DNA of 64,000 nucleotides from Selaginella moellendorffii. Lineage: Eukaryota > Plantae > Lycopodiophyta. Position 1 is the first letter of the stretch; every line of letters starts with the position of its first letter. This document shows positions 2,791-42,109 of the stretch, piece by piece. The translations under genes and the position numbers were made by a program. Below the pieces are notes generated by a model. That model saw only the letters and a program-made list of their open reading frames with translations, had not been told where the DNA came from and did not search any database. The DNA is taken from positions 1,952,052 to 2,016,051 of the forward strand of contig NW_003314273.1 in the NCBI RefSeq assembly GCF_000143415.4, read 5' to 3'.

Positions 2791-2796
2791 GCTGAC

Positions 2797-4823: not shown

Positions 4824-5830
4824 GTACAACTTAATGTAGTCCTATACAGATCTGATAATAGAGAGAGCAAAAGGAGTCATTAAAAATATTTTCAAATATT
4901 CTGGTACACGAAAGAATAATTTCTTAATGTTTTCGTGGCAATATTTTTATTAAACAGGTATTTTTAAAAATTTTAAATTTAAATAGTATTTAGATCTGAG
5001 TGGCAATATTTCTTATTTAATAGAGGTTTTACCTTCTGACCTGGTAATAGAGGTTTTACATGAAGCAATGCTTGGTTTACTTGATAGTAGTATCAATCAT
5101 TGAATAATTTGAATGAGCAATAATTATATACATATTTATAAATTATAAATCAAGATTAATATTATTGCATATCAATAGTGGAATAGAAAAGAATATACTT
5201 GAAATTTTTTTAGGAAATTTTATAAATTATAAACATGATCATAAATTATAAAAAAGATTAATCTAAATGAACAACAACCATTAGATAGTAGAATATCCTA
5301 AAATATCCAAGCATATTCAAAGTATATATAATACCACTTCAAGTTTGCTTAAGCAAACCAGTTATATATATGTATATATATAGTGTTTGGTCTCTTAAAC
5401 TTACACAAGCTTATTCACTATAAAACTTTAGACTTAAGTTTTTCCAACATTTTGTTGTAGAATATTCTTCTTTCAACCATGACCTGTACAAATATACAAA
5501 TTTCATAATTACAATTCAAGTTTCCTGATTTCGTATTTGTAGGAGAAACAATAAATATATGAAGATTACAAATACTTGGTGCAAAGACAATATACTCAAA
5601 GGCAATATAGTTAAAAAGTAAATATGAATCAAGCAACAATACCATAATCACATGTATATAGTTTTCAATTAGGAAAGTATTATTGTAAATGGGAATTTTT
5701 ACAACATTATAATCAGCCAATTTCCAAGTTGCAATTGCACATACTTATTTTAATGTTAAATTTCTAAAGTCTTTCATCCTTTGTATAGGATGGATCCAAA
5801 TGTTAAATTTTGAATTCATCTTAATGTTTG

Positions 5831-8903: not shown

Positions 8904-8909
8904 GTCAGC

Positions 8910-15045: not shown

Positions 15046-16919
15046 AGTACCTGGAGAGTGCCTTACAAAGCATGATGTTCATAGGTACTATAGTTTTTAG
15101 TTCATAGCTTTTTTGTTTCATCTTATAGCTAAAATAGCTTGAAGTCAGATATTTCTAACTAGTTCGACCATCTTGGCCTAAGCATCACATAAATCAAGTA
15201 CCTTCTTGTGAAGGCGAAACTGAAGTTTGTCAGTTTCATGAAAAGCTGTGAAGGCTCTGGAGCTTATCTCCTTACACATGGTAAGTATCTTGTTCTTTGA
15301 CTTTTTCATCAATGACATGTTATTTCAGGGACGGGAATGGACATACAATCTTATTGTGGAGAGGGTATTAGGAGGTGTTGCTCATCTCAGGAGCTTGCTG
15401 GTAAACTTTGTGAGGAAAATGGAGAAAGAGTGTAATGCAAGATTGACGGAGCCATCAACAAAACCCAAACAAAGATGAAAACAGGCGAAGGGATCTTAGG
15501 GGGCACACCATGGTCAAAAGATAAAAATATCAGAGACAATCATGCTCTGGATCATATTTCACAAATGGTTATTTATATAGGAAATTATATATCTATGGTG
15601 TTTGGTCACTTAAACTTAACTTGAAAACTTGGGACGCAAGCTTCTCCAAGTAGATTAGATGTTACATTCTGTCCTGTACAAATGTACAACTTTGTAACTA
15701 TGATTCAAGTACTTTAAATCTTTTTTGATTTCGTGATAGAGAGTTGTCCAAAGTAAATTGTGTGCTTTTGTCTTGCTGATGCTTGGCAAGTTTCTTTGTG
15801 CCTTCTTTCAGCTGATCTAGACAAGGTCGTTGATACATTCAAGTTTCGTGATGGTTGCACGTTTTTCTTTTATTGAAGAATTAACTCTCTCTTTGAGTGT
15901 AATTATAAGAAATGCCCTATATTGTTTTCAGTGTAATTTATAGATAAAGTTTATTTTAGTTTCAAATACAATACCAATATCTATTTTTTTCACCTCATGT
16001 TCAGACGTTATGATGAATCCAAACTTTAACATTTGGATCCATCCTATGCAAAGGATGAATGATTTCAGAATTTTAATGTTTATATGTAATTGTAATTCGG
16101 GAATTGGTTGATTATGATGTTGTAAAGCTTCCCATTTATAAGATCACTTCCATACTTGAGAATTATATACTCATAATGATGGTATTCTTGCTTGATGGCT
16201 ATTTTTTACTTTCAACTATAATGCTTTTGAGTATGTTGTCTTTGCTTCCTTTAACCAAGTATTTGTAATGTTCATATGTTTGTTGTTTCTCGTCTACTAA
16301 TATGAAATCAAAAAAGATTTAAAGAACTTGAATTATAATTATAAAAGTTATATATTTGTACAGAGCATGGTTGAAAGAAAAACATAACATCTAATCAACA
16401 ACAAAATCTCAGAGAAACTTAAGTCCCAAGTTTAATCAAAGAAGTTTTGGGAAAAAAGTTCTATATAATAATGTAAATAGGTTTGTGAATAAGCTTCTAT
16501 AGGTTTAAAGTGACCAAACACTATAGATCTTTGCTTCAGCAAACCTATGGTGGTATTGAATATACTTAAACTATGCTTGGAGATTCTAGGATATTTTAAT
16601 ATCTAATAGTTGTTGTTCATTTAGATTAATCTTTTTGATTATAATTTATAAACTTCCGTATAAACACTTTCTAGTATATTTTTGTTTATTCTACTATAAT
16701 ATTAATCTCAAATAAGTTTATAACTAAATTACTCACAGCAAATTAATTAAGAGATAAGTATTGTCTCTCATAGTTTTTATCTCTTCACCAAGGTGTGCCA
16801 GCTAAGATCCTTTCGCGTCTTTTCAGGTACCATCTTTGATTGACGGCTCCATCAACCTTGCATAACACTCTTTCCTTGCAAAGTTTACCAAGCTCCCAAG
16901 AAAAGCTTTTCTCTCATTG

Positions 16920-17820
16920 AGCGACCACGCTGAGTAGTGGATTCCCTCCAGATTTCTCTCCCAGATCTGCGAGTGGAGCCTCTTCTCTGCTAAGTCGCCG
17001 CGTGCCTTGAGTGCCACCATGAAAGTCTGAGCGTTTGGCTGCGGCTTGCTCATAGCACTCAAGAGCAAAGGTTGTTCTTGGCAAATCCCAGGAAACAACG
17101 TTTTGCTGCTCCATGCAAAGTCTCAGCGTTTGGAGGCAGGCCAGCTTCTCGTTGCATCTGGTAGAAGACGTGCACGTCCCATGATGATCGTGTTCCAGGC
17201 AACCAACGTCGTGTTTCTTTGTCCTCCTGAACACTTCTGATGCTTCCACATGTCCACGAGGCTGCTTGCGACGAATGCATTGGGTTAATTTGCGAGGTAG
17301 ACCAACCTATCCTGTTCTTCGTCCCATCCTGTCAAACAACCTGTGTTGCAAGCCGCAGTGTAGACTTCGACCATACTTCCACAATTTTGCACTTGCTTGA
17401 TTCCTGGCTTATGATGCTCTTGACTCTGGGGAATCCTATCTGGCCGCTATGCCCTGCTCTGCTTCTTCTCATCGAAGTTGAGATTTGAGCACCTGCAAGA
17501 ACAGAGAGCAAAAGTAGTATGTTACCTTTCTCAAACCTTTCGTCTCAAGCAACTTCTCTAGCCTTTCGAGGTGCACTAACGTCTGCTCGCCCGTCACCTC
17601 TAGAGGATAGCTCAGTCAAATCGAAACTTGGTAGGTTCCTGCTCTACTTTCCAGTCCATGTTCCGAGCCAGCTGCGCGATAACTTCCAAGCCTGGTGACT
17701 TCCACCAGTGGACTCTTCACCGTCCGTGAGCAAGACCCTGCTGTCTTCTTGCTCTGCAACTTCATCTCCTTGAAGATTGCTTGTACACAATCTTCCATGT
17801 GACAAGGCATGCACTGTGCT
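16920..17820 (-). pseudogene. PLS-class PPR remnant (unit B2)
   Basis: ASEVFRRTKKHDVGC, MEQQNVVSWD and QPNAQTFMVALKA lie in shifting frames. Confidence 0.75.
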
Positions 17821-17823
17821 GAC

Positions 17824-18588
17824 TTACGCGTCACTGCCAGTGTTGGCAGGACACTTTGAGGAGAATCCCAGAGTGCCATTGCTGTGCGAACCACGAGTGT
17901 GAGCTTCCAGCTGTTTCTTCTCAGTCAGAGAATCGTCCACCACAACTTCGATCTGCCACCCGGGATCCTGAAAGATCGCATTCCTGCACTGCTTCCTCCG
18001 AGAGAACATCCATCGCACGAGCAAAAANNNNNNNNNNNNNNNNNNNNNNNNNNNNNNNNNNNNNNNNNNNNNNNNNNNNNNNNNNNNNNNNNNNNNNNNN
18101 NNNNNNNNNNNNNNNNNNNNNNNNNNNNNNNNNNNNNNNNNNNNNNNNNNNNNNNNNNNNNNNNNNNNNNNNNNNNNNNNNNNNNNNNNNNNNNNNNNNN
18201 NNNNNNNNNNNNNNCCTCCATGGTGGTGACCATGGTGGTGAACAACCAGAGGAGCTCCATCACCGTGATGATGATGGTACACTGCTGCTGCTGGAGCTGG
18301 ATCGTGGTGGCGAGCATCAGGCGCTGGAGCTAGATGAGCAGGGTGGCTGCGAGCAGGGTGAACGAAAGCAGCTGGCGCTGGGGCTCGAACTGGAGCGTCA
18401 CCTTGAAGAACTGGAGCTAAAGCTGGCACTGGCTCGTGGGCTCCTCGAGGATGGTGTCCATGGTGGTGTGGTGGATGTGCTGGAGCTAGAGCTGGAGCTC
18501 GCGGGTGTGAAGCTCGGTGATGGCCGCCATGCCAGGGCGCTGGAGCTCGGCGGGCAAGCGTTGGGGCGGCGTGAGCGCGAGAGACCAT
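17824..18588 (-). CDS. His-rich membrane protein copy spanning an assembly gap (unit B2)
   Basis: Both visible ends are near-identical to 2797-3573; the middle is N. Confidence 0.5.
   Translation of the reverse strand: MVSRAHAAPTLARRAPAPWHGGHHRASHPRAPALAPAHPPHHHGHHPRGAHEPVPALAPVLQGDAPVRAPAPAAFVHPARSHPAHLAPAPDARHHDPAPAAAVYHHHHGDGAPLVVHHHGHHHGXXXXXXXXXXXXXXXXXXXXXXXXXXXXXXXXXXXXXXXXXXXXXXXXXXXXXXXXXXXXXXXFLLVRWMFSRRKQCRNAIFQDPGWQIEVVVDDSLTEKKQLEAHTRGSHSNGTLGFSSKCPANTGSDA
18028..18214. other. Assembly gap (N run) over the GGT microsatellite and TM-coding part
   Basis: Run of N. Confidence 1.
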
Positions 18589-19052
18589 AGCTTACCTGAC
18601 GAGAGCTTCGACAATAGAAAAATCCAAGCGAGAAAGATTATAACCTAACCCTTGACTTAGAAAATAGAAAATAAAGAGGTACTTTTGGCTTTGTGAAAAA
18701 AACAAGAGCTTGTGACGTTGTGGATTGTCGGACTTGAACTGAGCATGCCAAAGAGCCCAAACCTAGATGTGAACAGCGGTTTAATCTCACAATCACGAAA
18801 TGCTCAATATTTCAAAAAGATAAGGCATTTTTAATTTGATGGCAACTCCTTTCCATACTCAATTCTAATTTACTTGCAGTGAATGAAACTTTTTTACTCG
18901 TTTGCAAAAAAGTGGGAAAAAAAAATACAAGATAAACATCTATGCATTGCTCTGTTGACAATCTCACGGTGCAACATCCATTCATAGTTCCCCTAGTCAA
19001 CACCAGTAAAATCGGTCAAAACGCCTGGAACGATCCAATAATCAAACATATT

Positions 19053-19109
19053 TGGAGATGCTGGTTATTGATCCCTAAGCGAGCACTCTACCATCTGAGT
19101 TATCTCCCC
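19053..19109 (-). pseudogene. tRNA-Ala pseudogene with 16-nt deletion
   Basis: Same sequence as 4028-4084. Confidence 0.85.
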
Positions 19110-19591
19110 TTAGCAAAGAAACAAAAATGCTAAACTTTTCTCTTCACCATTCTAATACTCATCCTTGGAGATTCTGGCAGCTTTTGTTGCATTTCAAGAG
19201 CGTTTTGAGAGATGAGCTTTGGAAAGCCCACCATCTCCAGCAAGTTTCTATAGCCAAGAAGCTGCATCAGCAGGCAACCATGAAGAATGTTACTAATGCT
19301 TATAATAATAATACATATTATAGTAATAGTAATCACAAGAGGAGGAGGAAAAGGGATAGTGTTTTGCTTTGCAGTGTTATGCAAGAGGATGAGTAAAGCA
19401 ATTGGTAAAACCAACACAATATAAATCAACTGGTATGGTCTTCTGTACCAATCAAATTGTCTAAACACTAATATTAATTGGTATTTTGGTTTGCTAGTAA
19501 ACATATTTAGCTACATATTTGTATAGCTAAAAGTCTTTTAAAATGAGTAACTTGTTTTTCTTACAAAAGCTCAAAATTGCAAATGTCACCT

Positions 19592-19848
19592 TCACATTCT
19601 TTCAAAATTTAAGTGCATTTGCTTTTCTGAACAAACAAATAGAGATATTGGGCATGCTTGATCAATCCAAAGAAACCAATTATTAAAAGCTTACTTGGTG
19701 ATGGATTTTGTTTCAAGGTGGCCTCTCTCCATTCCTTGTAATCCAAGCATGTTGTCCTGCCTGGATCTTGTACCAAAACCAAACTAATGCCTGTGGAACT
19801 TGTAAGTTGTAACAAGCAAATCAATGCCTTCCTACTGACCTCAAGAAT
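19592..19848 (-). pseudogene. Inverted ORC6 3' fragment (unit B2)
   Basis: Same as 4567-4823 (ORF 19609..19854 is identical). Confidence 0.9.
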
Positions 19849-21906
19849 GTACAACTTAATGTAGTCCTATACAGATCTGATAATAGAGAGAGCAAAAGGA
19901 GTCATTAAAAATATTTTCAAATATTCTGGTACACGAAAGAATAATTTCTTAATGTTTTCGTGGCAATATTTTTATTAAACAGGTATTTTTAAAAATTTTA
20001 AATTTAAATAGTATTTAGATCTGAGTGGCAATATTTCCTATTTAATAGAGGTTTTACCTTCTGACCTGGTAATAGAGGTTTTACATGAAGCAATGCTTGG
20101 TTTACTTGATAGTAGTATCAATCATTGAATAATTTGAATGAGCAATAATTATATACATATTTATAAATTATAAATCAAGATTAATATTATTGCATATCAA
20201 TAGTGGAATAGAAAAGAATATACTTGAAATTTTTTTAGGAAATTTTATAAATTATAAACATGATCATAAATTATAAAAAAGATTAATCTAAATGAACAAC
20301 AACCATTAGATAGTAGAATATCCTAAAATATCCAAGCATATTCAAAGTATATATAATACCACTTCAAGTTTGCTTAAGCAAACCAGTTATATATATGTAT
20401 ATATATAGTGTTTGGTCTCTTAAACTTACACAAGCTTATTCACTATAAAACTTTAGACTTAAGTTTTTCCAACATTTTGTTGTAGAATATAAACAAAGAT
20501 GAAAACAGGCGAAAGGATCTTAGGGGGCACACCATGGTCAAAAGATAAAAATATCAGAGACAATCATGCTCTGGATCATATTTCACAAATGGTTATTTAT
20601 ACAGGAAATTATATATCTATGGTGTTTGGTCTCTTAAACTTAACTTGAAAACTTGGGACTCAAGCTTCTCCAAGTAGATTAGATGTTACATTCTGTCCTG
20701 TACAAATGTACAACTTTGTAACTATGATTCAAGTTCTTTAAATTGTTTTTGATTTGGTGATAGAGAGTTGTCCAAAGTAAATTGTGTGCTTTTGTCTTGC
20801 TGATGCTTGGCTGCCTTCTTTCAGCTGATCTAGACAAGGTCGTTGATACATTTAAGTTTCATGATGGTTGCACGTTTTTCTTCTATTGAAGAATTAATTC
20901 TCTCTTTGAGTGTAATTATAAGAAATGCCCTATATTGTTTTCAGTGTAATTTATAGATAAAGTTTATTTTAGTTTCAAATACAATACCAATATCTATTTT
21001 TTTCACCTCATGTTCAGACATTATGATGAATCCAAACTTTAACATTTGGATCCATCCTATGCAAAGGATGAAAGATTTCAGAATCTTAACATTTAAAGAA
21101 TTATATGTAATTGCAATTCAGGAATTGGTTGATTGTAATGTTGTAAAGCTTCCCATTTATAATATCACTTCCATACCTGAGAATTATATACTCGTAATGA
21201 TGGTATTCCTGCTTGATGGTTATTTTTTACTTTCAATTATAATGCCTTTAAGTATGTTGTCTTTGCTTCCTTTAACCAAGTATTTGTAATGTTCATATGT
21301 TTGTTGTTTCTCATCTACTAATATGAAATTAAAAAAGATTTAAAGAACTTGAATTATAATTATAAAGTTTGTATATTTGTACAGAGCATGGTTGAAAGAA
21401 AAACATAACATCTAATCAACAACAAAATCTCGGAGAAACTTAAGTCCCAAGGTTTAATATGGGTTTAATCAAAGAATTTTTGGGAAAAAAGTTCTATATA
21501 ATAATGTAAATAGGTTTGTGAATAAGCTTCTATAGGTTTAAAGTGACCAAACACTATAGATCCATAATTGGTTTGCTTCAGCAAACCTATGGTGGTATTG
21601 AATATACTTAAACTATGCTTGGAGATTCTAGGATATTTTAATATCTAATAGTTGTTGTTCATTTAGATTAATTTTTTTTTTTTAATTTATAAACTTCCCT
21701 ATAAACACTTTCTAGTATATTTTTGGTTTGCTTAAGCAAACCTGTAGGAGGACTGGGATGGTAATGAATATACTTAGAATATGCTTGGATATTCTTGAAT
21801 ATTCTATCATCCAATGGTGGTTATTCATTTAGATTAATTTCATATTTATAATTTATAAACATGTTTATAATTTATAAACCTTTCTAACCACTTTGTATTA
21901 CCTGGT

Positions 21907-21999
21907 TTTTGGAGCATGAGCCAAAGAAACTGTGTAACATATAGTGCATTGGTTGGGCTCTATGTCCATAATGGCAATTGCAAGGGAGCTCTCAAAGTT
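21907..21999 (+). pseudogene. Single captured PPR motif inside the Helentron
   Basis: Translates to FWSMSQRNCVTYSALVGLYVHNGNCKGALKV. Confidence 0.7.
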
Positions 22000-22834
22000 C
22001 CACTGCCAAAGCCCTCAATCCAGGATCTTCCATGAAGCAGAGAATCTGGAGCCAAGACTGGATGGACGAAGCAGCCAGTGATCCACATGAAGGGAAGAAT
22101 GAAAAATAGGAGGAGTGCTCATAGAGGCCTCCCATCCTCAATTGTGACAAGCATGAAGCATTGAAACCAACTCAGGGATTTGAATAGTGCTCCCTTGAGA
22201 TCAATCATGATGCTATCGTCATTCTTGGCCGCTGCATTGTCCACTGGCTCCAATGGATTGCTCTTGTCCCTGGGAAGCATCAAGAAAATCTCATTTGGAC
22301 TAGTGAATTGATTGAGAATTGGCTCTCCCTGGAGGTTTGAGCTGAGAGCCACGATCCAGGATCAGAAACCCACTATGGCGGTACTGATTGATTGCCCAGA
22401 ATCAATCAATCAACCTGGAACGCATCTATGGATGGAGCTTAGATCTTCCTCTGTATGGCTCCCTATTATGTGAGTGGGCAGTGGGTAGAAAACAAAGATC
22501 AGTGGAGGACAATCTTTCTATTCCTATTCATTAGATTGTAGCAGCTGAGGAGTAAAGTCAGGCTGCTTCCAGCTTTAGCTTGGTCGATGATGAGAAGTAT
22601 CTGGCAAGGATGTTTACAAATGAGGAGAGTCAGTGCACAAAAAGGTTGAAAAGGTTCAGAAGGTTTGTCACCTGCCAAATCCCTAAGTTTGGCAAGTTGA
22701 CGGATTTTAATTTTTAGCTCAAAGTTTTATTCTTTTTTGTTTTTGATTCTTCAAAGTGAAGTCTAGTTTATTTTTGGATCTTTTTACTAGTATAAATTAA
22801 CTAGAGGTAATTCTGTTTAATCAATCATATAGAT

Positions 22835-24389
22835 ATGTCAGATTTGGATTGTGCTATGGATATTGTTCAGTCGTCACCCGCTGAGGATTTGTCTACAGAA
22901 TCAAATTCTTATGAAGGTTTGGTTTTTCTCTTTATTCCTTAGTATTTCTTGATTCATTTCTCTTTGGTTTTGTAGTTTCACAAGCAAAGAGGACAAAGTT
23001 GACCATCCTAAAAGCCACTATTGCATCACTTGTCTTTAAAAAAGCAAATTCAACCAAAATTCTTGAGCTGAAGGTTTTATCTATGTATGGTTTTGAAATC
23101 ATTTTTTTTCTGTAGTTTTGATTTGCTTTTTGCCTAGGTATGGAACTTATAAAGTTCATCTTGCAAAGAACACTCTGCGAAGTGCAAAATACTTAACTTA
23201 TATAATGGATTGTACAGATATGCATGGCTTGCAAACTTTAACTGTATATGGCGATTCATCCATGTGTGCACAATTATATAATAAATTTATGGTTGGTAAA
23301 TGTTTCTCACTTACAAGGTTTGTAATTTTTATAAAAAAAATTAACAAGATTATAATTCTCTCACTACAGATGGGTTGAACGATAGAAAAACCCAGTTTAC
23401 CACCATGGAACTTCAGAAAAAGTTCTTTATATTACAGATTCTTCTATCATTCAAATTATAGATGATTTTGATGTTAAATTAAGATTACAGCCAACTAGAG
23501 GAGCTTCTATATCATCTTTAATGGCTACTAGAGTTTATCCATAAGCTATACATGCTGTTGTAATTAACACTGGTATTTTTCCTAAAATAAAGATTGCTTC
23601 TTCTAATTAACTATGGTAATGTTTTTTCCTATTTAATTTTCTATTTCTAAGATATTTTCACAGCTCTATATGCATCTGGAGCATGAAGAGCAATATCATC
23701 ATATTGTAGCAGATTTATATGCTGGATATATGCCAAAGTTTTTATTTTTTAATATTATGAAAAGCATGAGTGTATCAGGTGATTTAGCAACACTTGGAAG
23801 TACTTTATTTTTGCTACTAGTTGATTCAAACGAAATTTAGAGGCTCAATGAAGTTTATAAAACACACCGTGGTCTCACTTCTAAAGACAAGGTAATATAA
23901 ATTGTTTACATCTACTTTCAACTCTAACTTCCAATTATACAGATTAGTGGATATTTCATCCTTGACAACCAACAGAGCCTCACTCAAGCTGAAAGTCTTT
24001 GCTCATTTTGCTCTTTCACAATGTTAGAGTAGAGAGAAGATGGTTTTGTTGTTTGCGTAAAGTATAAAGGGCGTTCCATGCCTCGTAAATCAGCTACAAT
24101 AACTGGTTCTATTATATCAAATGACATGATGGAATATAGAGTTACAGTGTGTGATAAAATGGTGGATAAAATTTATAATTTGGATGAAGGGTCTATTGTC
24201 AAGTTTGCTATGGAGTCCCTAGAAAAGATTGTTGTTTATCTGTCTTCAAAACCAACAAGATTCTTTCTATTGAATGAGGCAAATATTATTGTCCATTTTG
24301 AGACACCAAACAATTCAGCCATAGAAATTGCCCAAACCAGAAATAGATACAATTGTCTTTTGTCTATTTTTCAATTGCTTTCTCTATAA
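22835..24389 (+). pseudogene. RPA70-like OB-fold ssDNA-binding gene carried by the Helentron (about 6 exons, several in-frame stops)
   Basis: Short GT-AG introns join LKVLSMYG..YIMDCTDMHGLQTLTVYGD..LYNKFMVGKCFSLT..KNPVYH (DBD-A-like) to CSFC..CVKY..YRVTVCDKMVDKIY (zinc/DBD-C-like). Plant Helitrons are known to carry RPA70 homologs. Confidence 0.65.
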
Positions 24390-24419
24390 TACAAATATCT
24401 ATTCATGAAACCTTGCAGT

Positions 24420-26030
24420 GCTTCTCTTAACAATTTCTAGATTTCAAAGCACACAAACTAAAAATCCCATGGCAACGACTCACAAGATTGCTGCTGATTG
24501 CATTGCACAATCAATTAGAGAACTAATATGTGAGAAACACAAGCTGCCTCTGAAAGCCCCTCTCAGGTAATCTACCATGTTAACATTGTATGTCTAACAC
24601 CGGAATCCAGGAAAATGATCATTGTGCATCTGGCTAGGGAGTTCCTTAAGGGCTTCAGAGAAGCTGGGTGAAAAATGTGGTGTATTGCTTTCTATACTAG
24701 ATGCTAAACCCCATCTTGCAGTAAATGTGTAAGAAAATGAACGTGAAAGAGTTGAGCCACAAGCAATTCCAAATTTCAACTTTGTTGTTGATTTGTTTGA
24801 CCTAGATGCTTGAAGCCGTGTATGACATTGACATGAGTCCTTGTATCTTTGACATCTCTTTGTCACAGAGCTTGCAGATTGCTAAACTAAGGCTCTTGCT
24901 TCTGAATGACCGTGCTCTTACTGGATCCTACTGGATAACTTACAAAAGAAAAACAAAACAGCTTAGAAGAAAGTTAAATGGGAAAGCACACATACATCAA
25001 AGGTTCGCTTTGGTTCTTGGCCCTGGATATCCATCTTTGGCAATGTTGAGCTCTCCTTCACCCTGTAGTAGCTCAAAAGAAATCATTTCAAGTAGAACCT
25101 ACATCAAGGTATATAAAAAAAAAAGTCCTAACGAGAAAGAAAGTTACAAACTACTTCAAACCATCTTTGAGTCCATCGACTTTTCAGGGACTTGTCATTG
25201 GACGTGCGAGGGTTTTCCACAGCCAATCCTGTAAATTGAAAACATCATGCTAGATACCAGTCTCCATAGTGAGAACAATGTTACTTGTTTGTGGAATCAT
25301 CCTACCTAGTTGAAGATATCTCACTTGACATTTTGAACAACTTTCTTTGGACTTGGCTACCTCGTCCAAGGCTGTCACTGTCAGTAGAACCTGAAGATGC
25401 TCTCACTACGGATTTGTAATGATGAAAATCTTCTCTCTGGGCAGAAGTAGAAGTTTAAGGTGCTGGAAGAGCTGCTGTCTCATAGGATTCGAGACGACAC
25501 CGTCCCTACATTTGTATCCTCTAGTATAATTTGAACCTGCAAAGACTCTACGTTTCCAATGGCAAAGTACTAAATCCAAACTTGAGAAACCAGCTCCAAA
25601 AACTAACAAAGCCACGATGTTACTCTAGAGCTTCTTATCTTGTGGGAGCTTATGTGAATGAAAAGGAAAAACAAAAGGAAGAAAGAAAAAAAAAAGGAGG
25701 AATCATCACACACCTTGTGTTGGATCTCTCTTCAATCTTCTAACCACGTCCAACACCCTGTCCAATCCTTCAATCTAGTGTAGCATAAAGAAGATGAAGA
25801 CCATTCCTGAAAGACTTACAAAAACAAAATGTCACCTTGTTTTGATGAAGTTTAGAGTAAAGCATTGGCCCTCGTATCCCTCGAAAATCTCCTAGTGCAT
25901 GATCCATTCAACTGCTCAAGTGGCAAGACCCAAGAATCCATGTGAGGTAGTGGCATTAAGCCCAAAAGAAAGAGATCTAGAAACAATACAATTGAGCAGG
26001 CAGTCAATTACCTAAGAATGCATGAGTCTG
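24420..26030 (-). pseudogene. Unidentified multi-exon gene remnant inside the Helentron
   Basis: Alternating exon-like blocks and short T-rich introns on the minus strand (CTG-A-rich acceptor and TAC/CAC donor mirrors near 25230, 25285, 25390, 25537, 25712, 25807). No product recognised. Confidence 0.35.
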
Positions 26031-26392
26031 GTACTTGTGCTCACGTTTCTTTCATAAGCCCATTTTAGGCCCATTTAAATAAAGACTTAATATAGCTTTA
26101 GGGCATAAATGGCTTTCAACGGAATGAGAAGTAAGTAAAAGGTCTTTGATTGTTTTTACTGGTCTAGATTATCAATTATCAACCTTCACAAAGCTGTTGA
26201 TTGAAAGATAGAGAATTAATACTTGCTGAAAGTAGGCTAAAAATAGTTCATTTGGTTCGATTGTTGAATCTCTTTAAACAATCTTGATCAATTAAACAAT
26301 CATAGAAAAAACTAATCTGGACGCACCCACCTATCCGGTGGGTGTAAGGACATCAAGGGCAATAAGGGCATTTTAGTATAAAGGGCAAAATT

Positions 26393-29300
26393 ATGACAAA
26401 GAGAAAATTTGAATGGATAGAACTTCTAGATGCAAAATTGTTATTAATTCAAGGATCTGTAAATAAAAAAGCAAAAGAACTAAAATTCAACCATAATATT
26501 GATTTAACTGAGCAACAAATTGTTTCTAGATACTATTATTTACCAAGAAAGAATAAAAATGAGCAAATAAAAACTATTAATATATCCAAAGAAAAACATG
26601 AAGAACGTACTTTACAAAACAATATTTAAGACAACAGAAGAAGACAAAATACTTATGGAAACTTGGAACTCACAAAAACAAACAAATGAAAAAATAAATA
26701 TTTTTTGACAAAGAACAGGGAATACTATATCAGATGAAAAACTTAAAAGAAGAGTATATATTAGAAGCAAAAAAAAGAAAACAATAAAAGAGAAAGAACA
26801 ACAAGAAAATGAATATGACATAAACAATCCAAAAAGTATGAAAGCAATACAAATGTATAATGAAGCTATACAGGATATACCGATACATCCATGTAAAATA
26901 TGTAAAAGACTTTGGTTTAAATATAATACAAAACAAGAATATGCATGCAATCAATGCATGACAAATAAAGATAAATATAAAAGTCCAGAAAAAATTAGAA
27001 TGAATCAAATTGATCAATATACAGAACAACTAAATGATATTGAAGAGAAAATGATAGCTTTACGTCTTTTATTTGCAAATATAACAATACCAAATCAACC
27101 TCAATATCAACAGTGCATAAAAGGAGGAGTAATAAATGTCCCAACTAATATTAAACCAATAATTAATAAACTACCAAGAACATTTGAAGAAACACAAACA
27201 ATAACAATTCAGTTGAAACAAAGATTAACTGATAAATATTATTATAAATATGGAATAGCCAGACCACATTATATTTATAATAGTATAAAACAATTACAAG
27301 AAACCGAACTATATAAGAAAAATAAATTAATATAGATGAAAACTAGTTTCAACAAGCACAAAAATTAGACAATATAGATAATAACGCACAAATAATATTA
27401 GAAAACGAATTACAATAAGAATTAAATGAAGATGATGAAAGTGTAAATCTTATAGACAACACTGATAATGAGATATTACCAACAGATACTATGGTAATTA
27501 GCTTCTTAGAAGCAAATCAAATGGATAATTTTACAAATAAAGTTTTAGTTATAGCACCTGGTCAAGGATAACACCCATTAGGATTATTTGTAGATGAAAA
27601 TGCTGAAGAAATGGCATATCCAAAACCATTTGGTGGAAAACCAAGACCATTAGACATAAAAAGTAAATTTACATATCAAGAAATAATCTAATGGGAATTA
27701 ATGAATGAGGATAGAAAATTTGCACGACATATTGAACATATATTTACAGCAGCAGTAAAAATGAAATCAAATTTGTTAATTAAAATGCAGGTTTTAGATT
27801 AAGAAAATTTACTTATGAAGGAAGAAAAGTCACATCAAAAGATGTGCTTCTAAATGGAAATATGGATAAAATATTAAAGTCAAACATAGGTTTTAGAGAT
27901 TTAAGAAATCTAAGAACATCACCAGATAATTTAGAAGCACTAAAAAAAGATGCATTTGCCATAATAAGACAATTAAGACCACCAACACTATTCTTAACTC
28001 TTAGTTGTTCAAAAAGACATTGGGAACCATTAATAAATGCTTTAAAACATTTAAATACAGATATATTATAAAAAGAAGAGATAGAAAATTTAAATAAAAA
28101 AGAGAAAATATATAAAATACTAAGAGCTGATCCAATCACCACAATACAATATTATGCACATAAAACATCAGCATTTAGAAAATTATTAATGTCCAATTAT
28201 CACATATTTGGAAGGAAAGTAAAAGACTATGTATTTGTAGCACAATTTCAACAACATGGTACACCACATGAACATGCACTAATATGGGTAGAAAATCCAC
28301 CACAAACATTAGGACAAATAAAAGAATATGTAATGAAAATATATGTACAGATTTAGAGAAACTACCACATAATATAAAAGATGTTCAAACTCATAAACAT
28401 AGAAAAACATGTAAGAAATATAAAAATATAAATTCCTCCAATGAAATCTTAGAGCCTATAAAAGACATTACAAAACATGAAAAGGATTTATATACAATAA
28501 TTTTTAAAAAAAACAATACTATAAGATAAAACTATAGATCTAAAAAATTTAGAGTTTGATTAATATTTAAAAATAATAGGAATAACATATGAGCAATATA
28601 AAGCAACAATAAGATCGACAATAACAAATACAAAAAAAATTTATAAACAAAAACCAAAAGACATAAACACAAATACTTTTAATAACAAATTATCAAATTT
28701 GTGCAATCAAATGTAGATATACAAAATAATCTTGATCCATATACAGCAGCATCATATTGTTTATCATACATTGCATGTATTGAAACAAAAATAACAAAGA
28801 CATTATCAACTGTATTTAAAAAATGCCAAGAAGGAACAGATGCATTTAATAGAGTTCAGTTATTAGGAAATAGCTTAATACGTGGTAGGGAAATGCCAAT
28901 TCAACAAACACTTTTTTTAATATTGTCAATCCCAATTTCATCATATGTCTAAAACTGTAAAGTTCATTGATATTAAACCACAAGAACAACAAACAAAATG
29001 TTTAAAAACAAAACAAGACCTTGCAAAAATGCAAAAAGATGAAACAGACATAGCAGTACTTGGACTAATTGAAAAATTCATGCAAAGACCAGAAGAATTA
29101 GAAGATTTAACATTAGCAGAGACAACAACTGAATATATAATTGAAAAAGAACTAACAACACAAAAATATTCAAAAAACAATATAATTAGATATATAAACT
29201 TTAGTAAAGAAAAAGATCCAGAAAAGTGGGCCTTTGAAAGATTAATCTTACATAAAAAATTTAGAAAAGAAGAAGATCTTAAAGAAATGTACACAATATA

Positions 29301-31680
29301 TATGAATGCATATGAAGCAAATATGGAACAAATAAATGAAAAACAACATCAAAACATATATAAAAATGTAACAAATGAGAGTGAATTTGATTGGGAGAAT
29401 CCAGAACAAGAAGCAAATAAAATATTAAAAAAACAAGCACAGTATATACAAAAAATAAACACAAACCAAACAGATGAATTTGATATAGGGAAAGATTTAT
29501 TCAAAATGAAAATTAACAAAAACTTAAATTTAAATATAAAAGATAAAATATTAACAAATACAAAAATTATAATACAAGATGAATACCTTATGGAAACTAG
29601 TAAATATCACCAATTATTAAGAACTCTTAAAAAAAAGCAAAGAATAATACATGATGACTTCATATTGAAAAAAATAAAACAACCTAACAAACAATTATGC
29701 TTATTTTTAACAGGAGGAGCAGGAACTGGAAAATCAATGCTTTTAAATACACTTATAGAAACACTCAAACGATATTATAAAACAAACCAAGATATAAATA
29801 ATGAACTAGGACAAACAATATTAATAACAGCACCTACAAGAAAAGCAGCTTGTAATATAAATGGTTCAACAATACATTTAGCTTTTGCATTTTGACCAGA
29901 AGCATCAAAACAACACCAAACAATATTAACAAATGACACATTAGATAAAAATAAAAGAAAGTTTTCAACAATAAAATGTTTAGTAATAGATGAAATATCA
30001 ATGGTAAGTATAGAAATGCTACAAGATATACATAGAAGATGTGAAAGCTTCAAAACAACATATGGAATAGACTTTGGTGGGATGGATTGTATATTTACAG
30101 GTGATTTCTATCAATTAAATCCTACATTTGAAGCACCAATTTATTCAACAAGAACATATAGACCTGAAAATGATGTCTCCATACACCACTCATGGAAAAA
30201 TAATTTTAAAATCTATGAACTTACTGAAATAATGAGGCAAAAAGATGATATAATCTTTATAAAAGCTTTAAATAAAATAAAAATAGGAGAACAAACAGAT
30301 AAAGAGCTAGAATATATAAATAAACAAGTCACCACAGATACATATAACACAGAATACTATTCTATATTTGCAACTAATGAACAAGTAAGAGAACATAATG
30401 AAAAAATAATACAAAACATACAAGGTAAAGATATAATTATAGAAGCACAAGACAAACATGGAAATTCCTGTCCTACACATTTCACGCTGCTAAATGACAC
30501 AAGAAAAACACAAGGACTACATAAAATATTACATTTGAAAAAGAAAATGGCAATTGAAATAACACAAAATATAGCAACAGAAGATGGATTAGTAAATGGA
30601 GCTGATGGAGTATTACAAGATGTAACCCAAGTTGAAGAATAACAAATAATGTGAATAGAATTCCCAAATATAAAAACAGATGAAAAAACAAGAGCTAAAG
30701 AAAACATAACAATAAAGCAAAATAATGAAAAAAAACTGGACACCAATAAAAAAATAACAAGAACAATAAATATTACTAAAAATAAAAACTATGTTATAAG
30801 TAGAACCCAATTTCCAGTACAACCATGCGCAGGAAGAACAATACATAGAGCACAAGGACCAGTAGTTATGCAATTAAGATATGACCCATATAAAACAAAA
30901 TATCCAGGATAAGCATATACTGCATTATCAAGAGCACAAACATTAAAAGGGATACATTTATATAGACCACTTGAACATAAACATATTAAAATCAATAAAG
31001 ATGCAGCTAAAGAAATAATAAGAATGACAACAGAAGCACCATGGCAAATTGATTTAATGGATTTACAAGAAGAATAAAAAGCTAACCAAACAATTATACA
31101 AGTTCTAAATACAAGATCTATTACTACACATCAAGAAGATATAAAGAGTGATTCACAATTATTAACATCAGATATAATATGTATGCAAGAAGTAAGAACA
31201 CAAAAACATGAGGATTTAAATTTTAATAAATATAAATCATATATACATGAATAACCCCCACATATAGCAATATTGCATACAAATGACTACAAATCAGAAA
31301 TAGTAGAACATTTAAAAACAGAAACAATGGCAATGTCATATGTATCACTAGAAAAAAATAAAAAACAATTAAATTTATATAGAAGACCTGGAACAAATAT
31401 ACATATATTCATAAAACAACTAAAAAAATATATACAGAAAATAGATAATAAAAAACCAGTAATAATTAGAGGAGATTTTAATATTGACTACCAAATAGAA
31501 GAAGTAAAACCACTTCAAACAATAATGGTGAAAGAAGGATATATACAAATAATAAAACACAATACACGTAATAATAAATTAATAGATCATATATGGATAA
31601 AAGATATAATATATACAAAAGCAGGAATAGCACATTGGACAGATCATAACAAATTATATATCATAATAAAAAATATTTAA
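26393..31680 (+). pseudogene. RepHel transposase: Cys-rich N-terminus, HUH Rep, PIF1-family helicase, C-terminal EEP/APE endonuclease; disrupted
   Basis: Rep: IRQLRPPTLFLTLS, QFQQHGTPHEH, DIQ..DPYTAASYCLSY. Helicase: GGAGTGKS, APTRKAA, IDEISMV, GDFYQL, LTEIMRQKDD, DGLVNGADG, RTQFPV..TIHRAQG, YTALSRA. Endonuclease: LNTRS..SDIICMQE, GDFNID, IDHIW, WTDH. Multiple stops and frameshifts. Confidence 0.93.
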
Positions 31681-31979
31681 AAACAAAAGCAAACCAAGCG
31701 TTGCTGCAATGCAATGCGCAGCAATTTATTGTTTATTCTACTATAATATTAATCTTAAATAAGTTTATAGCTAAATTACTCAATGAATGATACTACAGCA
31801 AATTAATTAAGAGATAAGTATTGTCTCTCATATTTTTTATCTCTTCACCAAGGTGTGCCAGCTAAGATCCTTTCGCGTCTTTTCAGGTACCATCTTTGAT
31901 TGACGGCTCCATCAACCTTGCATAACACTCTTTCCTTGCAAAGTTTACCGACCTCCCAAGAAAAGCTTTTCTCTCATTG

Positions 31980-36757: not shown

Positions 36758-37330
36758 ATATGTTTATAAGGGATTAAAGACTCACCAAATGTAGGAAGTA
36801 TATATATGGGAATTAGTTTATTGTGATGTTGTAAATCTTCTTATTTATAGTATCAATTCCATAATTGAGAATTATATACTTGTAATGATGATATTGTCAT
36901 TTAATGTTAAGACTTTTAACTTTTGCCTTTAACTATAATGCCCTTGAGTATGTTGCCTTTGGTTCATTTGATTATGCATTTATAACTTTCACATATTTAT
37001 TTTTTCTCATTTTTAGAATTTCTTGAGAAACTGCTAATGTTTACCTTATTGTTATTGTTGTAAAGTGTTCTTTCCAAATTTAAAGCTTGTTTCATCTAAA
37101 GTTTAAAACTCCAAATACATCAATTTTACCCAACTAACCAAATACATGGTATATCTTTTGGTTTTGGATAACTAACACTACACAGAATAACTAGAGTACT
37201 TTCCTCCATAGCTAGAGCTCTAGAATCAATCAAAAAACTCTTGAAATGCGACAAAAAACACACTGGAATCTTCAAGGATGAGTACTATACTGGTGAAGAG
37301 AAAAGCTTTGCATTTTTGTTTCTATGCTAA

Positions 37331-39331: not shown

Positions 39332-41209
39332 AGTACCTGGAGAGTGCCTTACAAAGCATGATGTTCATAGGTACTATAGTTTTTAGTTCATAGCTTTTTT
39401 GTTTCATCTTATAGCTAAAATAGCTTGAAGTCAGATACTTCTAACTAGTTCGACCATCTTGGCCTAAGCATCATGTAAGCAGAGTACCTCCTTGTGAAGG
39501 CGAAACTGAAGCTTGTCAGTTTCATGAAAAGTTGTGAAGGCTCTAGAGCTTATCTCCTTACACATGGTAAGTATCTTGTTCTTTGACTTTTTCATCAATG
39601 ACATGTTATTTCAGGGACGGGAATGGACATACAATCTTATTGTAAAGAGGGTATTAGGAGGTGTTGCTCATCTCGGGAGCTTGTTGGTAAACTTTGTGAG
39701 GAAAATGGAGAAAGAGTGTAATGCAAGATTGACGGAGCCATCAACAAAACCCAAACAAAGATGAAAACAGGCGAAGGGATCTTAGGGGCCACACCATGGT
39801 CAAAAGATAAAAATATCAGAGACAATCATGCTCTGGATCATATTTCACAAATGGTTATTTATATAGGAAATTATATATCTATGGTGTTTGGTCACTTAAA
39901 CTTAACTTGAAAACTTGGGACTCAAGCTTCTCCAAGTAGATTAGATGTTACATTCTGTCCTGTACAAATGTACAACTTTGTAACTATGATTCAAGTTCTT
40001 TAAATCTTTTTTGATTTCGTGATAGAGAGTTGTCCAAAGTAAATTGTGTGCTTTTGTCTTGCTGATGCTTGGCAAGTTTCTTTGTGCCTTCTTTCAGCTG
40101 ATCTAGACAAGGTCGTTGATACATTTAAGTTTCGTGATGGTTGCACGTTTTTCTTCTATTGAAGAATTAACTCTCTCTTTGAGTGTAATTATAAGAAATG
40201 CCCTATATTGTTTTCAGTGTAATTTATAGATAAAGTTTATTTTAGTTTCAAATACAATACCAATATCTATTTTTTTCACTTCATGTTCAGACGTTATGAT
40301 GAATCCAAACTTTAACATTTGGATCCATCCTATGCAAAGGATGAATGATTTCAGAATTTTAATGTTTATATGTAATTGTAATTCGGGAATTGGTTGATTA
40401 TGATGTTGTAAAGCTTCCCATTTATAAGATCACTTCCATACTTGAGAATTATATACTCATAATGATGGTATTCCTGCTTGATGGCTATTTTTTACTTTCA
40501 ACTATAATGCTTTTGAGTATGTTGTCTTTGCTTCCTTTAACCAAGTATTTGTAATGTTCATATGTTTGTTGTTTCTCATCTACTAATATGAAATCAAAAA
40601 AGATTTAAAGAACTTGAATTATAATTATAAAAGTTATATATTTGTACAGAGCATGGTTGAAAGAAAAACATAACATCTAATCAACAACAAAATCTCAGAG
40701 AAACTTAAGTCCCAAGTTTAATCAAAGAAGTTTTGGGAAAAAAGTTCTATATAATAATGTAAATAGGTTTGTGAATAAGCTTCTATAGGTTTAAAGTGAC
40801 CAAACACTATAGATCTTTGCTTCAGCAAACCTATGGTGGTATTGAATATACTTAAACTATGCTTGGAGATTCTAGGATATTTTAATATCTAATAGTTGTT
40901 GTTCATTTAGATTAATCTTTTTGATTATAATTTATAAACTTCCGTATAAACACTTTCTAGTATATTTTTGTTTATTCTACTATAATATTAATCTCAAATA
41001 AGTTTATAACTAAATTACTCACAGCAAATTAATTAAGAGATAAGTATTGTCTCTCATAGTTTTTATCTCTTCACCAAGGTGTGCCAGCTAAGATCCATTC
41101 GCGTCTTTTCAGGTACCATCTTTGATTGACGGCTCCATCAACCTTGCATAACACTCTTTCCTTGCAAAGTTTACCAACCTCCCAAGAAAAGCTTTTCTCT
41201 CATTGAGCG

Positions 41210-42100: not shown

Positions 42101-42109
42101 TGTGCTGAC

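What the first reader, a model, noticed from the sequence alone, without database searches (positions are those of the whole stretch)
21723..31728. Complete plant Helentron/HLE2 combining an endonuclease-fused RepHel with its own RPA70-like gene
Seen: palindromic 5' end, 11-bp asymmetric TIRs, 3' hairpin, insertion in a T run with no TSD, and ends fixed by two empty paralogous sites. It has a Rep-PIF1-EEP gene whose stop lies 6 nt before the 3' TIR, and an intron-containing OB-fold/zinc gene. Established: RPA70 cargo is typical of canonical plant Helitrons (TC...CTRR ends), while APE fusion, sub-TIRs and TT targets define Helentrons, best known from animals, fungi and oomycetes. Inference: having both in one land-plant element is unusual and may mark a poorly described lineage.
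Basis: partly seen in the sequence, partly recalled or inferred. Interest (0 to 1): 0.8.

Follow-up and report, generated by a model that had tools for sequence, protein, structure and literature searches.

The report
Decayed Helentron transposon in a lycophyte
This is a 10-kb rolling-circle transposon of the already described Helentron (HLE2) type, structurally whole but with dead genes, sitting in a Selaginella-like plant genome; the claimed "unusual" gene combination is the normal Helentron set, and the RPA70 identity of its second gene is not proven.

Summary
The anatomy is real. A 10,006-bp insertion (21723-31728) is absent from two paralogous sites in the same window. It sits in a T run with no target duplication. 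It has a palindromic 5' sub-TIR, its 11-nt complement near the 3' end, and a 7-bp 3' stem-loop. It encodes DUF6570, Rep, PIF1 helicase and an EEP endonuclease in one direction, with the stop 6 nt before the 3' TIR.

That gene is dead: seven in-frame stops and at least four frameshifts, and no RNA reads.

The upstream gene has plausible short GT-AG introns. Pfam, PDB and an exhaustive HMMER search gave no OB-fold or RPA match, and two AlphaFold runs failed. Only language-model neighbours of two separate exons point to ssDNA-binding OB folds. No zinc motif was found.

- The element lies inside an older, related non-autonomous (HINE-like) copy.
- It carries a fragment of an expressed host gene.
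- A 91-92% identical deletion derivative lies in Selaginella moellendorffii.

Published work already describes Helentrons with endonuclease plus RPA (Thomas 2014) and HLE2 elements in land plants with RPA upstream (HELIANO 2024). Other first-reader notes of this scan report the same architecture elsewhere in this genome. Verdict: a new member of a known kind.

The parts
21723..31728 (+). Whole Helentron (HLE2) copy, 10,006 bp; the boundary is ambiguous by 2 nt within the T run
   Evidence: Absent from two paralogous empty sites. There are no further terminal motifs inside it.
21723..21742 (+). 5' terminus: TT plus an 18-nt perfect palindrome that holds the 5' sub-TIR (TTGGTTTGCTT)
   Evidence: (DNA fold -6.4 kcal/mol, z -3.8).
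21743..21900 (+). 5' internal region shared with the non-autonomous HINE-like copies (about 85% identity)
   Evidence: Word depth in a DNA run is about 32,800 here, against 60-1,360 elsewhere in the laid stretch.
22835..24389 (+). Accessory multi-exon gene, now a pseudogene with a TAG at 23383-23385. Well-defined exons: 22835-22916, 22976-23084, 23138-23317, 23370-23532, 23943-23994 and 24033-24389. The middle exons are uncertain. It is a putative two-OB-fold ssDNA-binding protein; RPA70 homology is unproven.
   Evidence: Splice model. The Selaginella gene model P0001 uses the 23994/24033 junction. ESM-atlas neighbours of two separate exons are all ssDNA-binding OB-fold families, at scores of 0.83-0.85. 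Negative results.
24533..24672 (+). Fragment of an expressed host gene carried inside the element: two partial exons and a 44-nt GT..AG intron at 24564-24607
   Evidence: RNA reads of three runs are only 90-95% alike, are spliced from 24563 to 24608, and run on into unlike sequence on both sides.
26393..31680 (+). RepHel-endonuclease pseudogene. The sense strand is 50% A and 26% G+C. It has seven in-frame stops and at least four frameshifts.
   Evidence: It is collinear with the DUF6570, Rep, PIF1 and EEP genes of the related locus L003.
27009..27317 (+). DUF6570 domain, preceded by a CxxC...CxxC zinc-finger motif
   Evidence: Pfam PF20209, 30 bits against a cut-off of 24.3. HELIANO names it an HLE2 marker.
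27907..28949 (+). Rep nuclease: Helitron_like_N, the HUH motif (PHEH) and the two-tyrosine motif (YCLSY). It is frameshifted between about 28300 and 28930.
   Evidence: Pfam PF14214 on two pieces; motifs read from the translations.
29626..31014 (+). PIF1-type helicase (Walker A GGAGTGKS, Walker B VIDEIS)
   Evidence: Pfam PF05970 and PF13245; PDB Pif1 hits at 1e-14; tblastn against L003 PIF1 at 3.5e-45.
31084..31677 (+). C-terminal AP-type (EEP) endonuclease in the helicase frame (motifs QE, GDFN, DH)
   Evidence: Pfam PF14529, 27.7 bits against a cut-off of 27.4. BLASTP against the L003 EEP piece gives 1e-5. tblastn. The best PDB hit is an exodeoxyribonuclease at E 0.076.
31687..31697 (+). 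3' sub-TIR AAGCAAACCAA, the exact complement of 21723-21733
31701..31724 (+). 3' stem-loop: 7-bp stem, 10-nt loop, 4 nt from the element end
   Evidence: The stem is present, but its energy is not distinguishable from shuffles.
21568..21722 (+). 5' half of an older HINE-like non-autonomous relative into which the element inserted. Its 3' half continues at 31729 to about 31800.
   Evidence: A palindrome with 1 mismatch at 21570-21587. The flanks are collinear with the HINE copy at 5040-5365 and with the empty sites.
16630..16730 (+). Empty paralogous site 1
40916..41016 (+). Empty paralogous site 2
5040..5365 (-). HINE-like non-autonomous copy of about 326 bp, with the same 5' palindrome and a similar 3' sub-TIR. 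An identical duplicate lies at 20065-20390.

Best explanation
This is one copy of a multi-copy Helentron (HLE2, endonuclease-bearing) family of rolling-circle transposons. The host genome is probably a Selaginella or a close relative.

History of this copy:
- It inserted into a T run inside an older, related non-autonomous (HINE-like) element.
- That happened after the local segmental duplications that left two empty paralogous sites.
- It has since decayed. The RepHel-endonuclease gene is a pseudogene and no RNA from the element was seen.

Inferred mechanism when the element was active, by analogy with studied Helitrons and not shown here:
- The HUH/two-tyrosine Rep domain nicked one strand at the ends marked by the palindromic sub-TIRs and the 3' stem-loop.
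- The PIF1 helicase unwound the strand.
- A single-stranded or circular intermediate was pasted between two T's without duplication.
- The fused AP-type endonuclease possibly nicked the T-rich target.

Other cargo:
- The upstream, same-strand, intron-bearing gene is most likely an accessory ssDNA-binding protein with two OB folds (about 0.65). That would match the RPA-like ORF that many Helentrons carry. Homology to RPA70 itself is unproven (about 0.4).
- The element also carries at least one fragment of a host gene.
For: Shown:
- Precise insertion against two empty sites, in a T run, with no target duplication.
- Palindromic sub-TIR 2 nt from the 5' end, its complement 31-41 nt from the 3' end, and a stem-loop.
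- DUF6570, Helitron_like_N, PIF1 and Exo_endo_phos_2 in order on one strand.
- Collinearity with the DUF6570-Rep-PIF1-EEP genes of the nearest retrievable relative, L003.
- HINE-like copies share both ends. The shared 5' region has about 25-500 times the word depth of the rest of the laid stretch.
- A 91-92% identical deletion derivative in S. moellendorffii GL377673.1 joins the accessory-gene region (23547-25087) directly to the helicase region (28960-29843). The two halves therefore belong to one family.
- The position of the accessory gene, upstream of RepHel, matches what HELIANO reports for RPA in HLE2.
- Two non-overlapping exons each have only ssDNA-binding OB-fold families as language-model neighbours.
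- Decay: the stops and frameshifts; CpG observed/expected of 0.18; zero RNA depth over 22523-24122 and 25723-27700 in three RNA runs.
Against: - No formal Rep/helicase tree against HLE1 and HLE2 references was built.
- The 3' stem-loop is not energetically exceptional.
- Exo_endo_phos_2 is only just above its Pfam cut-off.
- For the accessory gene there are no Pfam, PDB or HMMER matches.
- It shows no similarity to the Pfam-verified OB protein of L003.
- Both AlphaFold models were unusable, with mean pLDDT of 50 and 43.
- One intron-padded piece gave RNase-H-like neighbours instead of OB folds.
- The atlas scores are below the tool's 0.9 reliability mark.
- I chose the splice sites so as to keep the frame open.
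Confidence: 0.8

Rival explanations
1. It is a Helentron, but the upstream 'gene' is not an ssDNA-binding or RPA-like accessory protein. It would be a captured host gene or fragment of unrelated function, or a non-coding filler, carried along like the host fragment at 24533-24672.
For: - No HMM, PDB or exhaustive sequence match to any OB-fold family.
- Both structure models failed.
- G+C is 32-38% there, against 26% in RepHel.
- The introns are short, at 52-59 nt. From my own knowledge, not tested here, that size is typical of Selaginella host genes.
- A true host-gene fragment lies next to it.
Against: - Two independent exons give only OB-fold ssDNA-binding neighbours, which is the fold predicted beforehand.
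- The region is kept in the Selaginella deletion derivative.
- Its word depth is higher than that of RepHel.
- Its position and strand match published HLE2 RPA genes.
Confidence: 0.3
2. It is a composite. The 5' 4.5 kb (21723-26300) and the RepHel part (26300-31728) would be two different elements joined by nesting or recombination, not one family unit.
For: There is a sharp change in composition near 26300, from 36-38% to 24-28% G+C and from an AT skew of about 0 to 0.3. Word depth is uneven along the element.
Against: - Only one pair of termini is present, and it matches the empty-site boundaries. No terminal motif occurs inside, even with up to 3 mismatches.
- The S. moellendorffii copy links both halves.
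- Other first-reader notes report elements of 9.5-10 kb with the same two genes elsewhere in this genome (untested).
Confidence: 0.05
3. It is a canonical Helitron (HLE1) of the plant type that carries RPA and only resembles a Helentron.
For: Plant Helitrons commonly carry RPA-like genes.
Against: - The ends are not TC...CTRR, and the insertion is between T's, not between A and T.
- DUF6570 and a fused EEP domain are present.
- The helicase piece does not match the HLE1 Helraiser chain at E up to 0.001, and the Rep piece matches it only at E 0.19.
- The best named helicase relatives are animal proteins at 30-38% identity. The one relative whose locus could be read in full (L003, 33% helicase identity, unidentified eukaryote) is of HLE2 type.
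Confidence: 0.02

Closest known systems
Helentrons with an RPA ORF and their HINE/DINE-1 partners (mite Helentron-Mo-1A, Culex and Drosophila Helentrons; Thomas, Vadnagara & Pritham 2014, PMC4067079)
   Same: - One Rep/helicase/AP-endonuclease protein plus a separate ssDNA-binding-type ORF.
- Palindromic sub-TIRs of 11-15 bp, 2-4 nt from the 5' end and tens of nt from the 3' end.
- A short 3' stem-loop.
- Insertion in TT with a run of T's at the boundaries and no target duplication.
- Boundaries proven by paralogous empty sites.
- Short non-autonomous partners far more abundant than the autonomous element.
   Different: - The host is a land plant (a lycophyte) instead of an arthropod.
- The accessory gene has introns and no detectable CDD/Pfam RPA domains, whereas the mite RPA ORF is intronless and matched RPA1 DBD-A and DBD-B at 1e-12 to 1e-15.
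- This copy is a pseudogene.
Land-plant HLE2 elements reported by HELIANO (Li et al. 2024, PMC11417382), for example HelenSM92 of Sphagnum magellanicum
   Same: - HLE2 features in a land plant: short terminal inverted repeats and TT insertion sites.
- The DUF6570 marker.
- Extra captured domains, with RPA enriched upstream of RepHel in HLE2.
   Different: - HelenSM92 carries a GIY-YIG domain and no EEP endonuclease is mentioned for it.
- HELIANO found EN enriched in subgroup b and RPA limited to subgroup a. An EN-bearing plant element with an RPA-like gene would therefore be uncommon in their survey.
- I could not find out whether Selaginella was among their 13 species, because no supplement is held.
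L003: an HLE2 element on a 2.9-Mb eukaryotic contig of ENA assembly ERZ26695794
   Same: DUF6570, Rep, PIF1 and EEP in the same order, collinear by tblastn with 30% identity over the aligned helicase stretch. It also has a separate OB-fold gene (tRNA_anti-codon plus Ssb-like_OB, followed by a CxxC...CxxC motif).
   Different: - It has an OTU protease gene, which this element lacks.
- Its OB gene lies downstream of RepHel and shows no sequence similarity to the accessory gene here.
- Its ORFs look intact.
Canonical plant Helitrons with RPA-like genes (HLE1; for example the Mothra family, PMC4683698)
   Same: A rolling-circle RepHel transposon that carries a separate intron-containing ssDNA-binding-type gene and captured host fragments.
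   Different: HLE1 elements have TC...CTRR ends, insert between A and T, have no TIRs, no endonuclease and no DUF6570, and carry RPA downstream of RepHel.

Membership tests
Helentron / HLE2 | Rep (HUH plus two tyrosines) fused to a PIF1-type helicase | tested here: met
   Helitron_like_N on two pieces, and PIF1/AAA_19. The motifs PHEH, YCLSY, GGAGTGKS and VIDEIS were read from the translations.
Helentron / HLE2 | AP-type (EEP) endonuclease at the C-terminus of RepHel | tested here: met
   Exo_endo_phos_2 at 27.7 bits against a cut-off of 27.4, in the helicase frame. Similar to the EEP piece of L003. QE, GDFN and DH motifs are present. The domain is interrupted by stops at 31075 and 31252.
Helentron / HLE2 | DUF6570 in the transposase N-terminus (HLE2 marker according to HELIANO) | tested here: met
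   PF20209, E 7.8e-7, 30 bits against a cut-off of 24.3; the marker statement is.
Helentron / HLE2 | Sub-terminal inverted repeats of at least 11 bp, the 5' one 2-4 nt from the end | tested here: met
   An exact 11-nt complement, 21723-21733 against 31687-31697. The palindromic core starts 2 nt from the 5' end.
Helentron / HLE2 | Short palindrome or stem-loop between the 3' sub-TIR and the 3' end | tested here: met
   A 7-bp stem at 31701-31707 and 31718-31724. Its energy is not better than shuffles, so only the presence of the stem is met, not statistical support.
Helentron / HLE2 | Insertion between T's without target-site duplication, shown by empty sites | tested here: met
   Two empty paralogous sites.
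Helentron / HLE2 | Non-autonomous HINE/DINE-type partners that share the termini | tested here: met
   Copies at 5040-5365 and 20065-20390, and the host copy at 21568. There is a large excess of word depth over the shared 5' region.
Helentron / HLE2 | Rep and helicase group within the HLE2 clade in a phylogeny | not tested
   No HLE1 or HLE2 reference set was available. Indirect evidence only: the nearest retrievable relative, L003, is of HLE2 type, and the helicase piece did not match the HLE1 Helraiser chain.
Autonomous (functional) element | Uninterrupted transposase ORF | tested here: not met
   Seven in-frame stops and at least four frameshifts. No RNA over the part of the gene that was laid.
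Canonical Helitron / HLE1 | 5' TC and 3' CTRR ends with a hairpin, and insertion between A and T | tested here: not met
   The element starts TTGG and ends ATTTA, inside a T run.
RPA70 / RPA-like ssDNA-binding proteins | Recognisable OB-fold DNA-binding domains (Pfam tRNA_anti-codon, REPA_OB_2, Rep_fac-A_C, DUF223) | tested here: not met
   No hit at E up to 1 on any exon-sized piece. No PDB hit. The exhaustive HMMER search found only the Selaginella paralogue. The spliced protein could not be submitted to Pfam because the tools take only contiguous references.
RPA70 / RPA-like ssDNA-binding proteins | OB fold (five-stranded barrel) by structure | tested here: inconclusive
   AlphaFold mean pLDDT of 50 and 43. 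ESM-atlas neighbours of two exons are all OB-fold families, but at scores of 0.83-0.85, below the reliable range.
RPA70 / RPA-like ssDNA-binding proteins | Zinc ribbon in the C-terminal OB domain (DBD-C) | tested here: not met
   No CxxC...CxxC motif in the translated exons. The only such motif is in the RepHel N-terminus.

The most novel reading that the evidence does not exclude
The family could be a lycophyte-specific, endonuclease-bearing Helentron lineage. It would have acquired its own intron-bearing, two-OB-fold ssDNA-binding gene independently of the RPA-like genes of plant Helitrons and of animal Helentrons. The gene would be so diverged, or of such different origin, that no sequence method links it to RPA70. 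That would be a further independent recruitment of an ssDNA binder by rolling-circle transposons, and an exception to HELIANO's finding that RPA and EN sit in different HLE2 subgroups.
Probability: 0.25. Interest if true: 0.4.

Novelty: new member of a known kind. Interest (0 to 1): 0.25.

Why it matters
The copy adds a cleanly bounded, fully dissected Helentron with its non-autonomous partners to the still thin record of HLE2 elements in land plants. It may be the first described for a lycophyte: no paper in the held library links Selaginella with Helentron or Helitron2. It shows gene-fragment capture by a plant Helentron.

It is useful for transposon annotation of this genome: the family termini, the HINE-like repeats and pseudogenes that could be mis-called as genes, such as SELMODRAFT_428853. 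It does not change the understanding of Helitron biology, because the architecture, including an ssDNA-binding accessory gene upstream of a RepHel-endonuclease, is already published.

Tried and rejected
- In-frame TAA/TGA stops in an A-rich ORF suggested a variant genetic code. I rejected this: there are only seven stops, they include TGA, they sit beside real frameshifts, and CAA is abundant (58 codons) with strong CpG depletion. That fits C-to-T decay.
- Pfam on ten pieces of the accessory region, and on ten other ORFs on both strands of 21900-28500, found nothing.
- PDB sequence searches of three accessory pieces found nothing relevant.
- The word-index search found only P0001.
It returned P0001 plus a spurious NHL-repeat protein.
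- I tried to build a profile of Helentron OB proteins from the L003 gene, but only near-identical sequences came back.
- BLASTP, phmmer and hhalign of my spliced OB1 and OB2 models against the L003 protein, and against each other, were not significant.
- Two AlphaFold runs had low confidence, so I made no fold search.
- Exact-sequence look-ups of window ORFs to identify the assembly found nothing on record. Run and organism names were coded. The Selaginella assignment therefore rests on P0001 and L001 only.
- The L001 copy lacks both termini.
- Paper searches for Selaginella with Helentron or Helitron2 returned none. No HELIANO supplement is held.

Full report
**Observation**

The flanks of the reported interval are contiguous at two other places in the same window. 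Window 21000-21729 matches 15987-16687 and 40273-40973 at 92%. Window 31724-32400 matches 16678-17340 and 40964-41625 at about 96%. In the alignment the empty sites read TATATTTTT/GTTTATTC. The filled site has the same sequence split by 10,006 bp, with no duplicated bases. The split can be placed at three positions in the T run, from 21723-31728 to 21725-31730.

The window is a mosaic of segmental duplicates that are 93-98% identical. The insertion therefore post-dates those duplications.

**Ends**

- The element begins with TT followed by the perfect 18-nt palindrome GGTTTGCTTAAGCAAACC at 21725-21742. This folds far better than shuffled sequence (z = -3.8).
- The first 11 nt, TTGGTTTGCTT, are exactly complementary to 31687-31697.
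- Between that 3' sub-TIR and the end lies a 7-bp stem (31701-31707 with 31718-31724) and a 10-nt loop. Its energy is not exceptional for its composition (z = +0.85).
- Both terminal motifs recur elsewhere in the window well above chance: 6 matches against 0.07 expected, and 3 against 0.01. None lies inside the element.
- The ends are not TC...CTRR.

These features match, point by point, the Helentron structure described by Thomas et al. 2014:
- palindromic sub-TIRs 2-4 nt from the 5' end and tens of nt from the 3' end;
- a short 3' palindrome;
- TT targets with runs of T at the boundaries;
- boundaries confirmed by paralogous empty sites;
- abundant non-autonomous HINEs.

**Transposase**

Pfam finds the following on the + strand:

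| Domain | Piece | Note |
|---|---|---|
| DUF6570 | 26709-27332 | 30 bits against a cut-off of 24.3 |
| Helitron_like_N | 27784-28353 | on two pieces |
| PIF1 / AAA_19 | 28921-30639 | |
| Exo_endo_phos_2 | 31255-31677 | 27.7 bits against a cut-off of 27.4 |

- The HUH motif, the two-tyrosine motif, Walker A and B, and the endonuclease motifs QE, GDFN and DH are readable in the translations.
- The gene is dead. There are in-frame stops at 28069, 29893, 30640, 30652, 30910, 31075 and 31252 (five TAA, two TGA), and at least four frame changes between about 28300 and 28930.
- I considered a variant genetic code because the frame is so well kept. I rejected it: true frameshifts are present, TGA is among the stops, and there are 58 CAA codons with a CpG observed/expected ratio of 0.18. 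That is the signature of C-to-T decay.
- The sense strand is 50% A and 26% G+C, quite unlike the 5' 4.5 kb of the element.

**Relatives of the transposase**

- Among proteins of comparable length, the best matches to the helicase piece are 30-38% identical. Those that carry a name are animal proteins: wasps, an ant, a cichlid, a limpet, an oyster and rotifers.
- One unnamed match lies on a 2.9-Mb eukaryotic contig (L003). It belongs to an intact-looking element with DUF6570, OTU, Helitron_like_N, PIF1 and an EEP piece, and a downstream 342-aa protein with two OB-fold hits and a CxxC...CxxC motif.
- The window's RepHel is collinear with the DUF6570, Rep, PIF1 and EEP products of L003.
- Against the PDB, the helicase piece matches cellular and bacterial Pif1 at 1e-14 but not the HLE1 transposase Helraiser. 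The Rep piece matches Helraiser only at E 0.19.
- HELIANO names DUF6570 as a marker that separates HLE2 from HLE1, and EN as characteristic of HLE2 subgroup b. The hosts of subgroup b include fishes, molluscs, cnidarians and land plants.
- I did not build a tree because no reference set was available.

**Accessory gene**

No sequence method links it to RPA:
- Pfam was silent on all pieces at E up to 1.
- The PDB was silent.
- The word-index search found one protein: Selaginella moellendorffii SELMODRAFT_428853, 82% identical over 67% of the query.
- The exhaustive HMMER search of 1.84 billion representatives added only a spurious NHL-repeat protein.
- Two AlphaFold runs gave mean pLDDT of 50 and 43, so I made no fold comparison.

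Evidence in its favour:
- Reading the three frames, I could join four exons (22835-22916, 22976-23084, 23138-23317, 23370-23532) through GT-AG introns of 59, 53 and 52 nt. This gives 178 open codons with a single TAG at 23383-23385.
- Two later exons (23943-23994 and 24033-24389) use the same junction as the Selaginella gene model.
- By eye, the products show twice the strand-loop pattern of RPA-type OB folds. This is my inference.
- The language-model atlas gave only ssDNA-binding OB-fold families as neighbours (POT1, REPA_OB_2, Ssb-like, tRNA_anti-codon, CDC24_OB3, Shieldin OB). It did so for the 118-aa exon and, independently, for the clean 59-aa exon 3, at scores of 0.83-0.85.

Evidence against:
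- The tool rates scores below 0.9 as leads only.
- An intron-padded version of exon 3 gave RNase-H-like neighbours instead.
- Comparison with the Pfam-verified OB protein of L003 was not significant by any method.
- I found no zinc motif in this gene.

I put an OB-fold ssDNA binder at about 0.65 and true RPA70 homology at about 0.4.

**One family or a composite?**

The S. moellendorffii scaffold GL377673.1 (L001) holds a 91-92% identical deletion derivative. In it, window 23547-25087 is joined directly to 28960-29843. The accessory region and the RepHel therefore travel together. That copy has lost both termini.

First-reader notes of this scan list two more elements of 9.5-10 kb with the same two genes elsewhere in this genome, several endonuclease-bearing relics, and a 318-nt HINE-type family. 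I did not test those notes.

**New observations**

1. The element sits inside an older, related non-autonomous element.
   - A near-perfect copy of the 5' palindrome lies at 21570-21587.
   - The left flank plus the right flank are collinear with a 326-bp HINE-like copy at 5040-5365 (minus strand; an identical duplicate lies at 20065-20390). That copy carries the same 5' palindrome and a similar 3' sub-TIR.
   - The element's own first 180 bp are 85% identical to that HINE.
   - In a DNA run the word depth over the first 200 bp is about 32,800. It is 280-630 over the RepHel part that was laid and 900-1,360 over the first half of the accessory gene. These are relative figures only. They fit the rule that non-autonomous partners outnumber the autonomous element.
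2. Three RNA runs of the same species give zero depth over the first two-thirds of the accessory gene (22523-24122), only stray reads (depth below 1) over its last exon, and zero over the RepHel part laid. The exception is 24533-24672.
   - There, about 50 reads per run are only 90-95% alike.
   - They are spliced from 24563 to 24608 (GT..AG).
   - They run on into unrelated sequence on both sides.
   - So the element carries a genomic fragment (exon, intron, exon) of a host gene that is expressed elsewhere.
   - A further listing of probable RNA runs of this species holds next to none of the accessory gene's words.

**Comparison with what is known**

The literature says otherwise.
- Thomas et al. 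[quoted passage not shown] They describe a mite Helentron with Rep/Hel/endonuclease plus an RPA ORF as typical.
- HELIANO (2024) lists RPA among HLE2 domains, finds it enriched upstream of RepHel in HLE2, and reports HLE2 in 13 land-plant species of six classes, overturning the earlier view that land plants lack them.
- What remains particular: in HELIANO's survey EN is concentrated in subgroup b and RPA in subgroup a. No paper in the held library links Selaginella with Helentrons.

The finding is therefore a well-resolved new member of a known kind. It is useful for annotation but not surprising to a specialist.

**Mechanism**

- Shown here: the architecture, the insertion geometry, the family relationships and the decay.
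- Inferred from studied Helitrons and from the domain set: Rep nicks at the sub-TIR and stem-loop signals, the PIF1 helicase unwinds the strand, a single-stranded intermediate inserts between T's, the endonuclease possibly nicks the target, and the accessory protein possibly coats the single strand.

Noticed in passing
window 5040-5365 (-), 20065-20390 (-), 21568-21722 with 31729 to about 31800, 16526-16750, 40812-41035; fragments near 1276-1506, 10206-10438, 54490-54700: A family of HINE-like non-autonomous elements of about 326 bp. They share the 5' palindrome and a similar 3' sub-TIR with the 10-kb element, which itself lies inside one of them. Read depth suggests that they are very abundant in the genome.
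   Followed up: partly
window 24533-24672: RNA reads from three runs match at only 90-95%, are spliced from 24563 to 24608 (GT..AG), and continue into unlike sequence. This is a fragment of an expressed host gene captured inside the element. The parent gene was not identified.
   Followed up: partly
window 26300-31700: The sense strand of the RepHel-endonuclease is 50% A with 26% G+C (AT skew about 0.3). The rest of the element and the host sequence are quite different. The cause is unexplained: native codon bias of the lineage, or mutation bias.
   Followed up: no
whole window (for example 1-3163 against 8537-11700 inverted; 12925-18027 against 37191-42313; 3200-5465 against 18215-20490): The window is a mosaic of direct and inverted segmental duplicates, 93-99% identical, around G+C-rich ORFs. 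That is why empty paralogous sites are available.
   Followed up: partly
L003:4224-15232 (ENA assembly ERZ26695794, 2.9-Mb contig): An intact-looking HLE2 element in an unidentified eukaryote: DUF6570, OTU, Rep, PIF1, an EEP piece and a downstream two-OB-fold protein with a CxxC...CxxC motif. Its OB protein has about 50 near-identical member sequences.
   Followed up: partly
L001:10001-11002 (S. moellendorffii GL377673.1): The annotated 'hypothetical protein' SELMODRAFT_428853 is a chimeric gene model. It was built from the accessory-gene exon and the captured host fragment of a truncated copy of this transposon family.
   Followed up: partly
window 25105-25313: One contig of the DNA-type run lacks 207 bp bounded by GT..AG. 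This may be an intron-less version of another captured gene segment, or a deletion variant.
   Followed up: no
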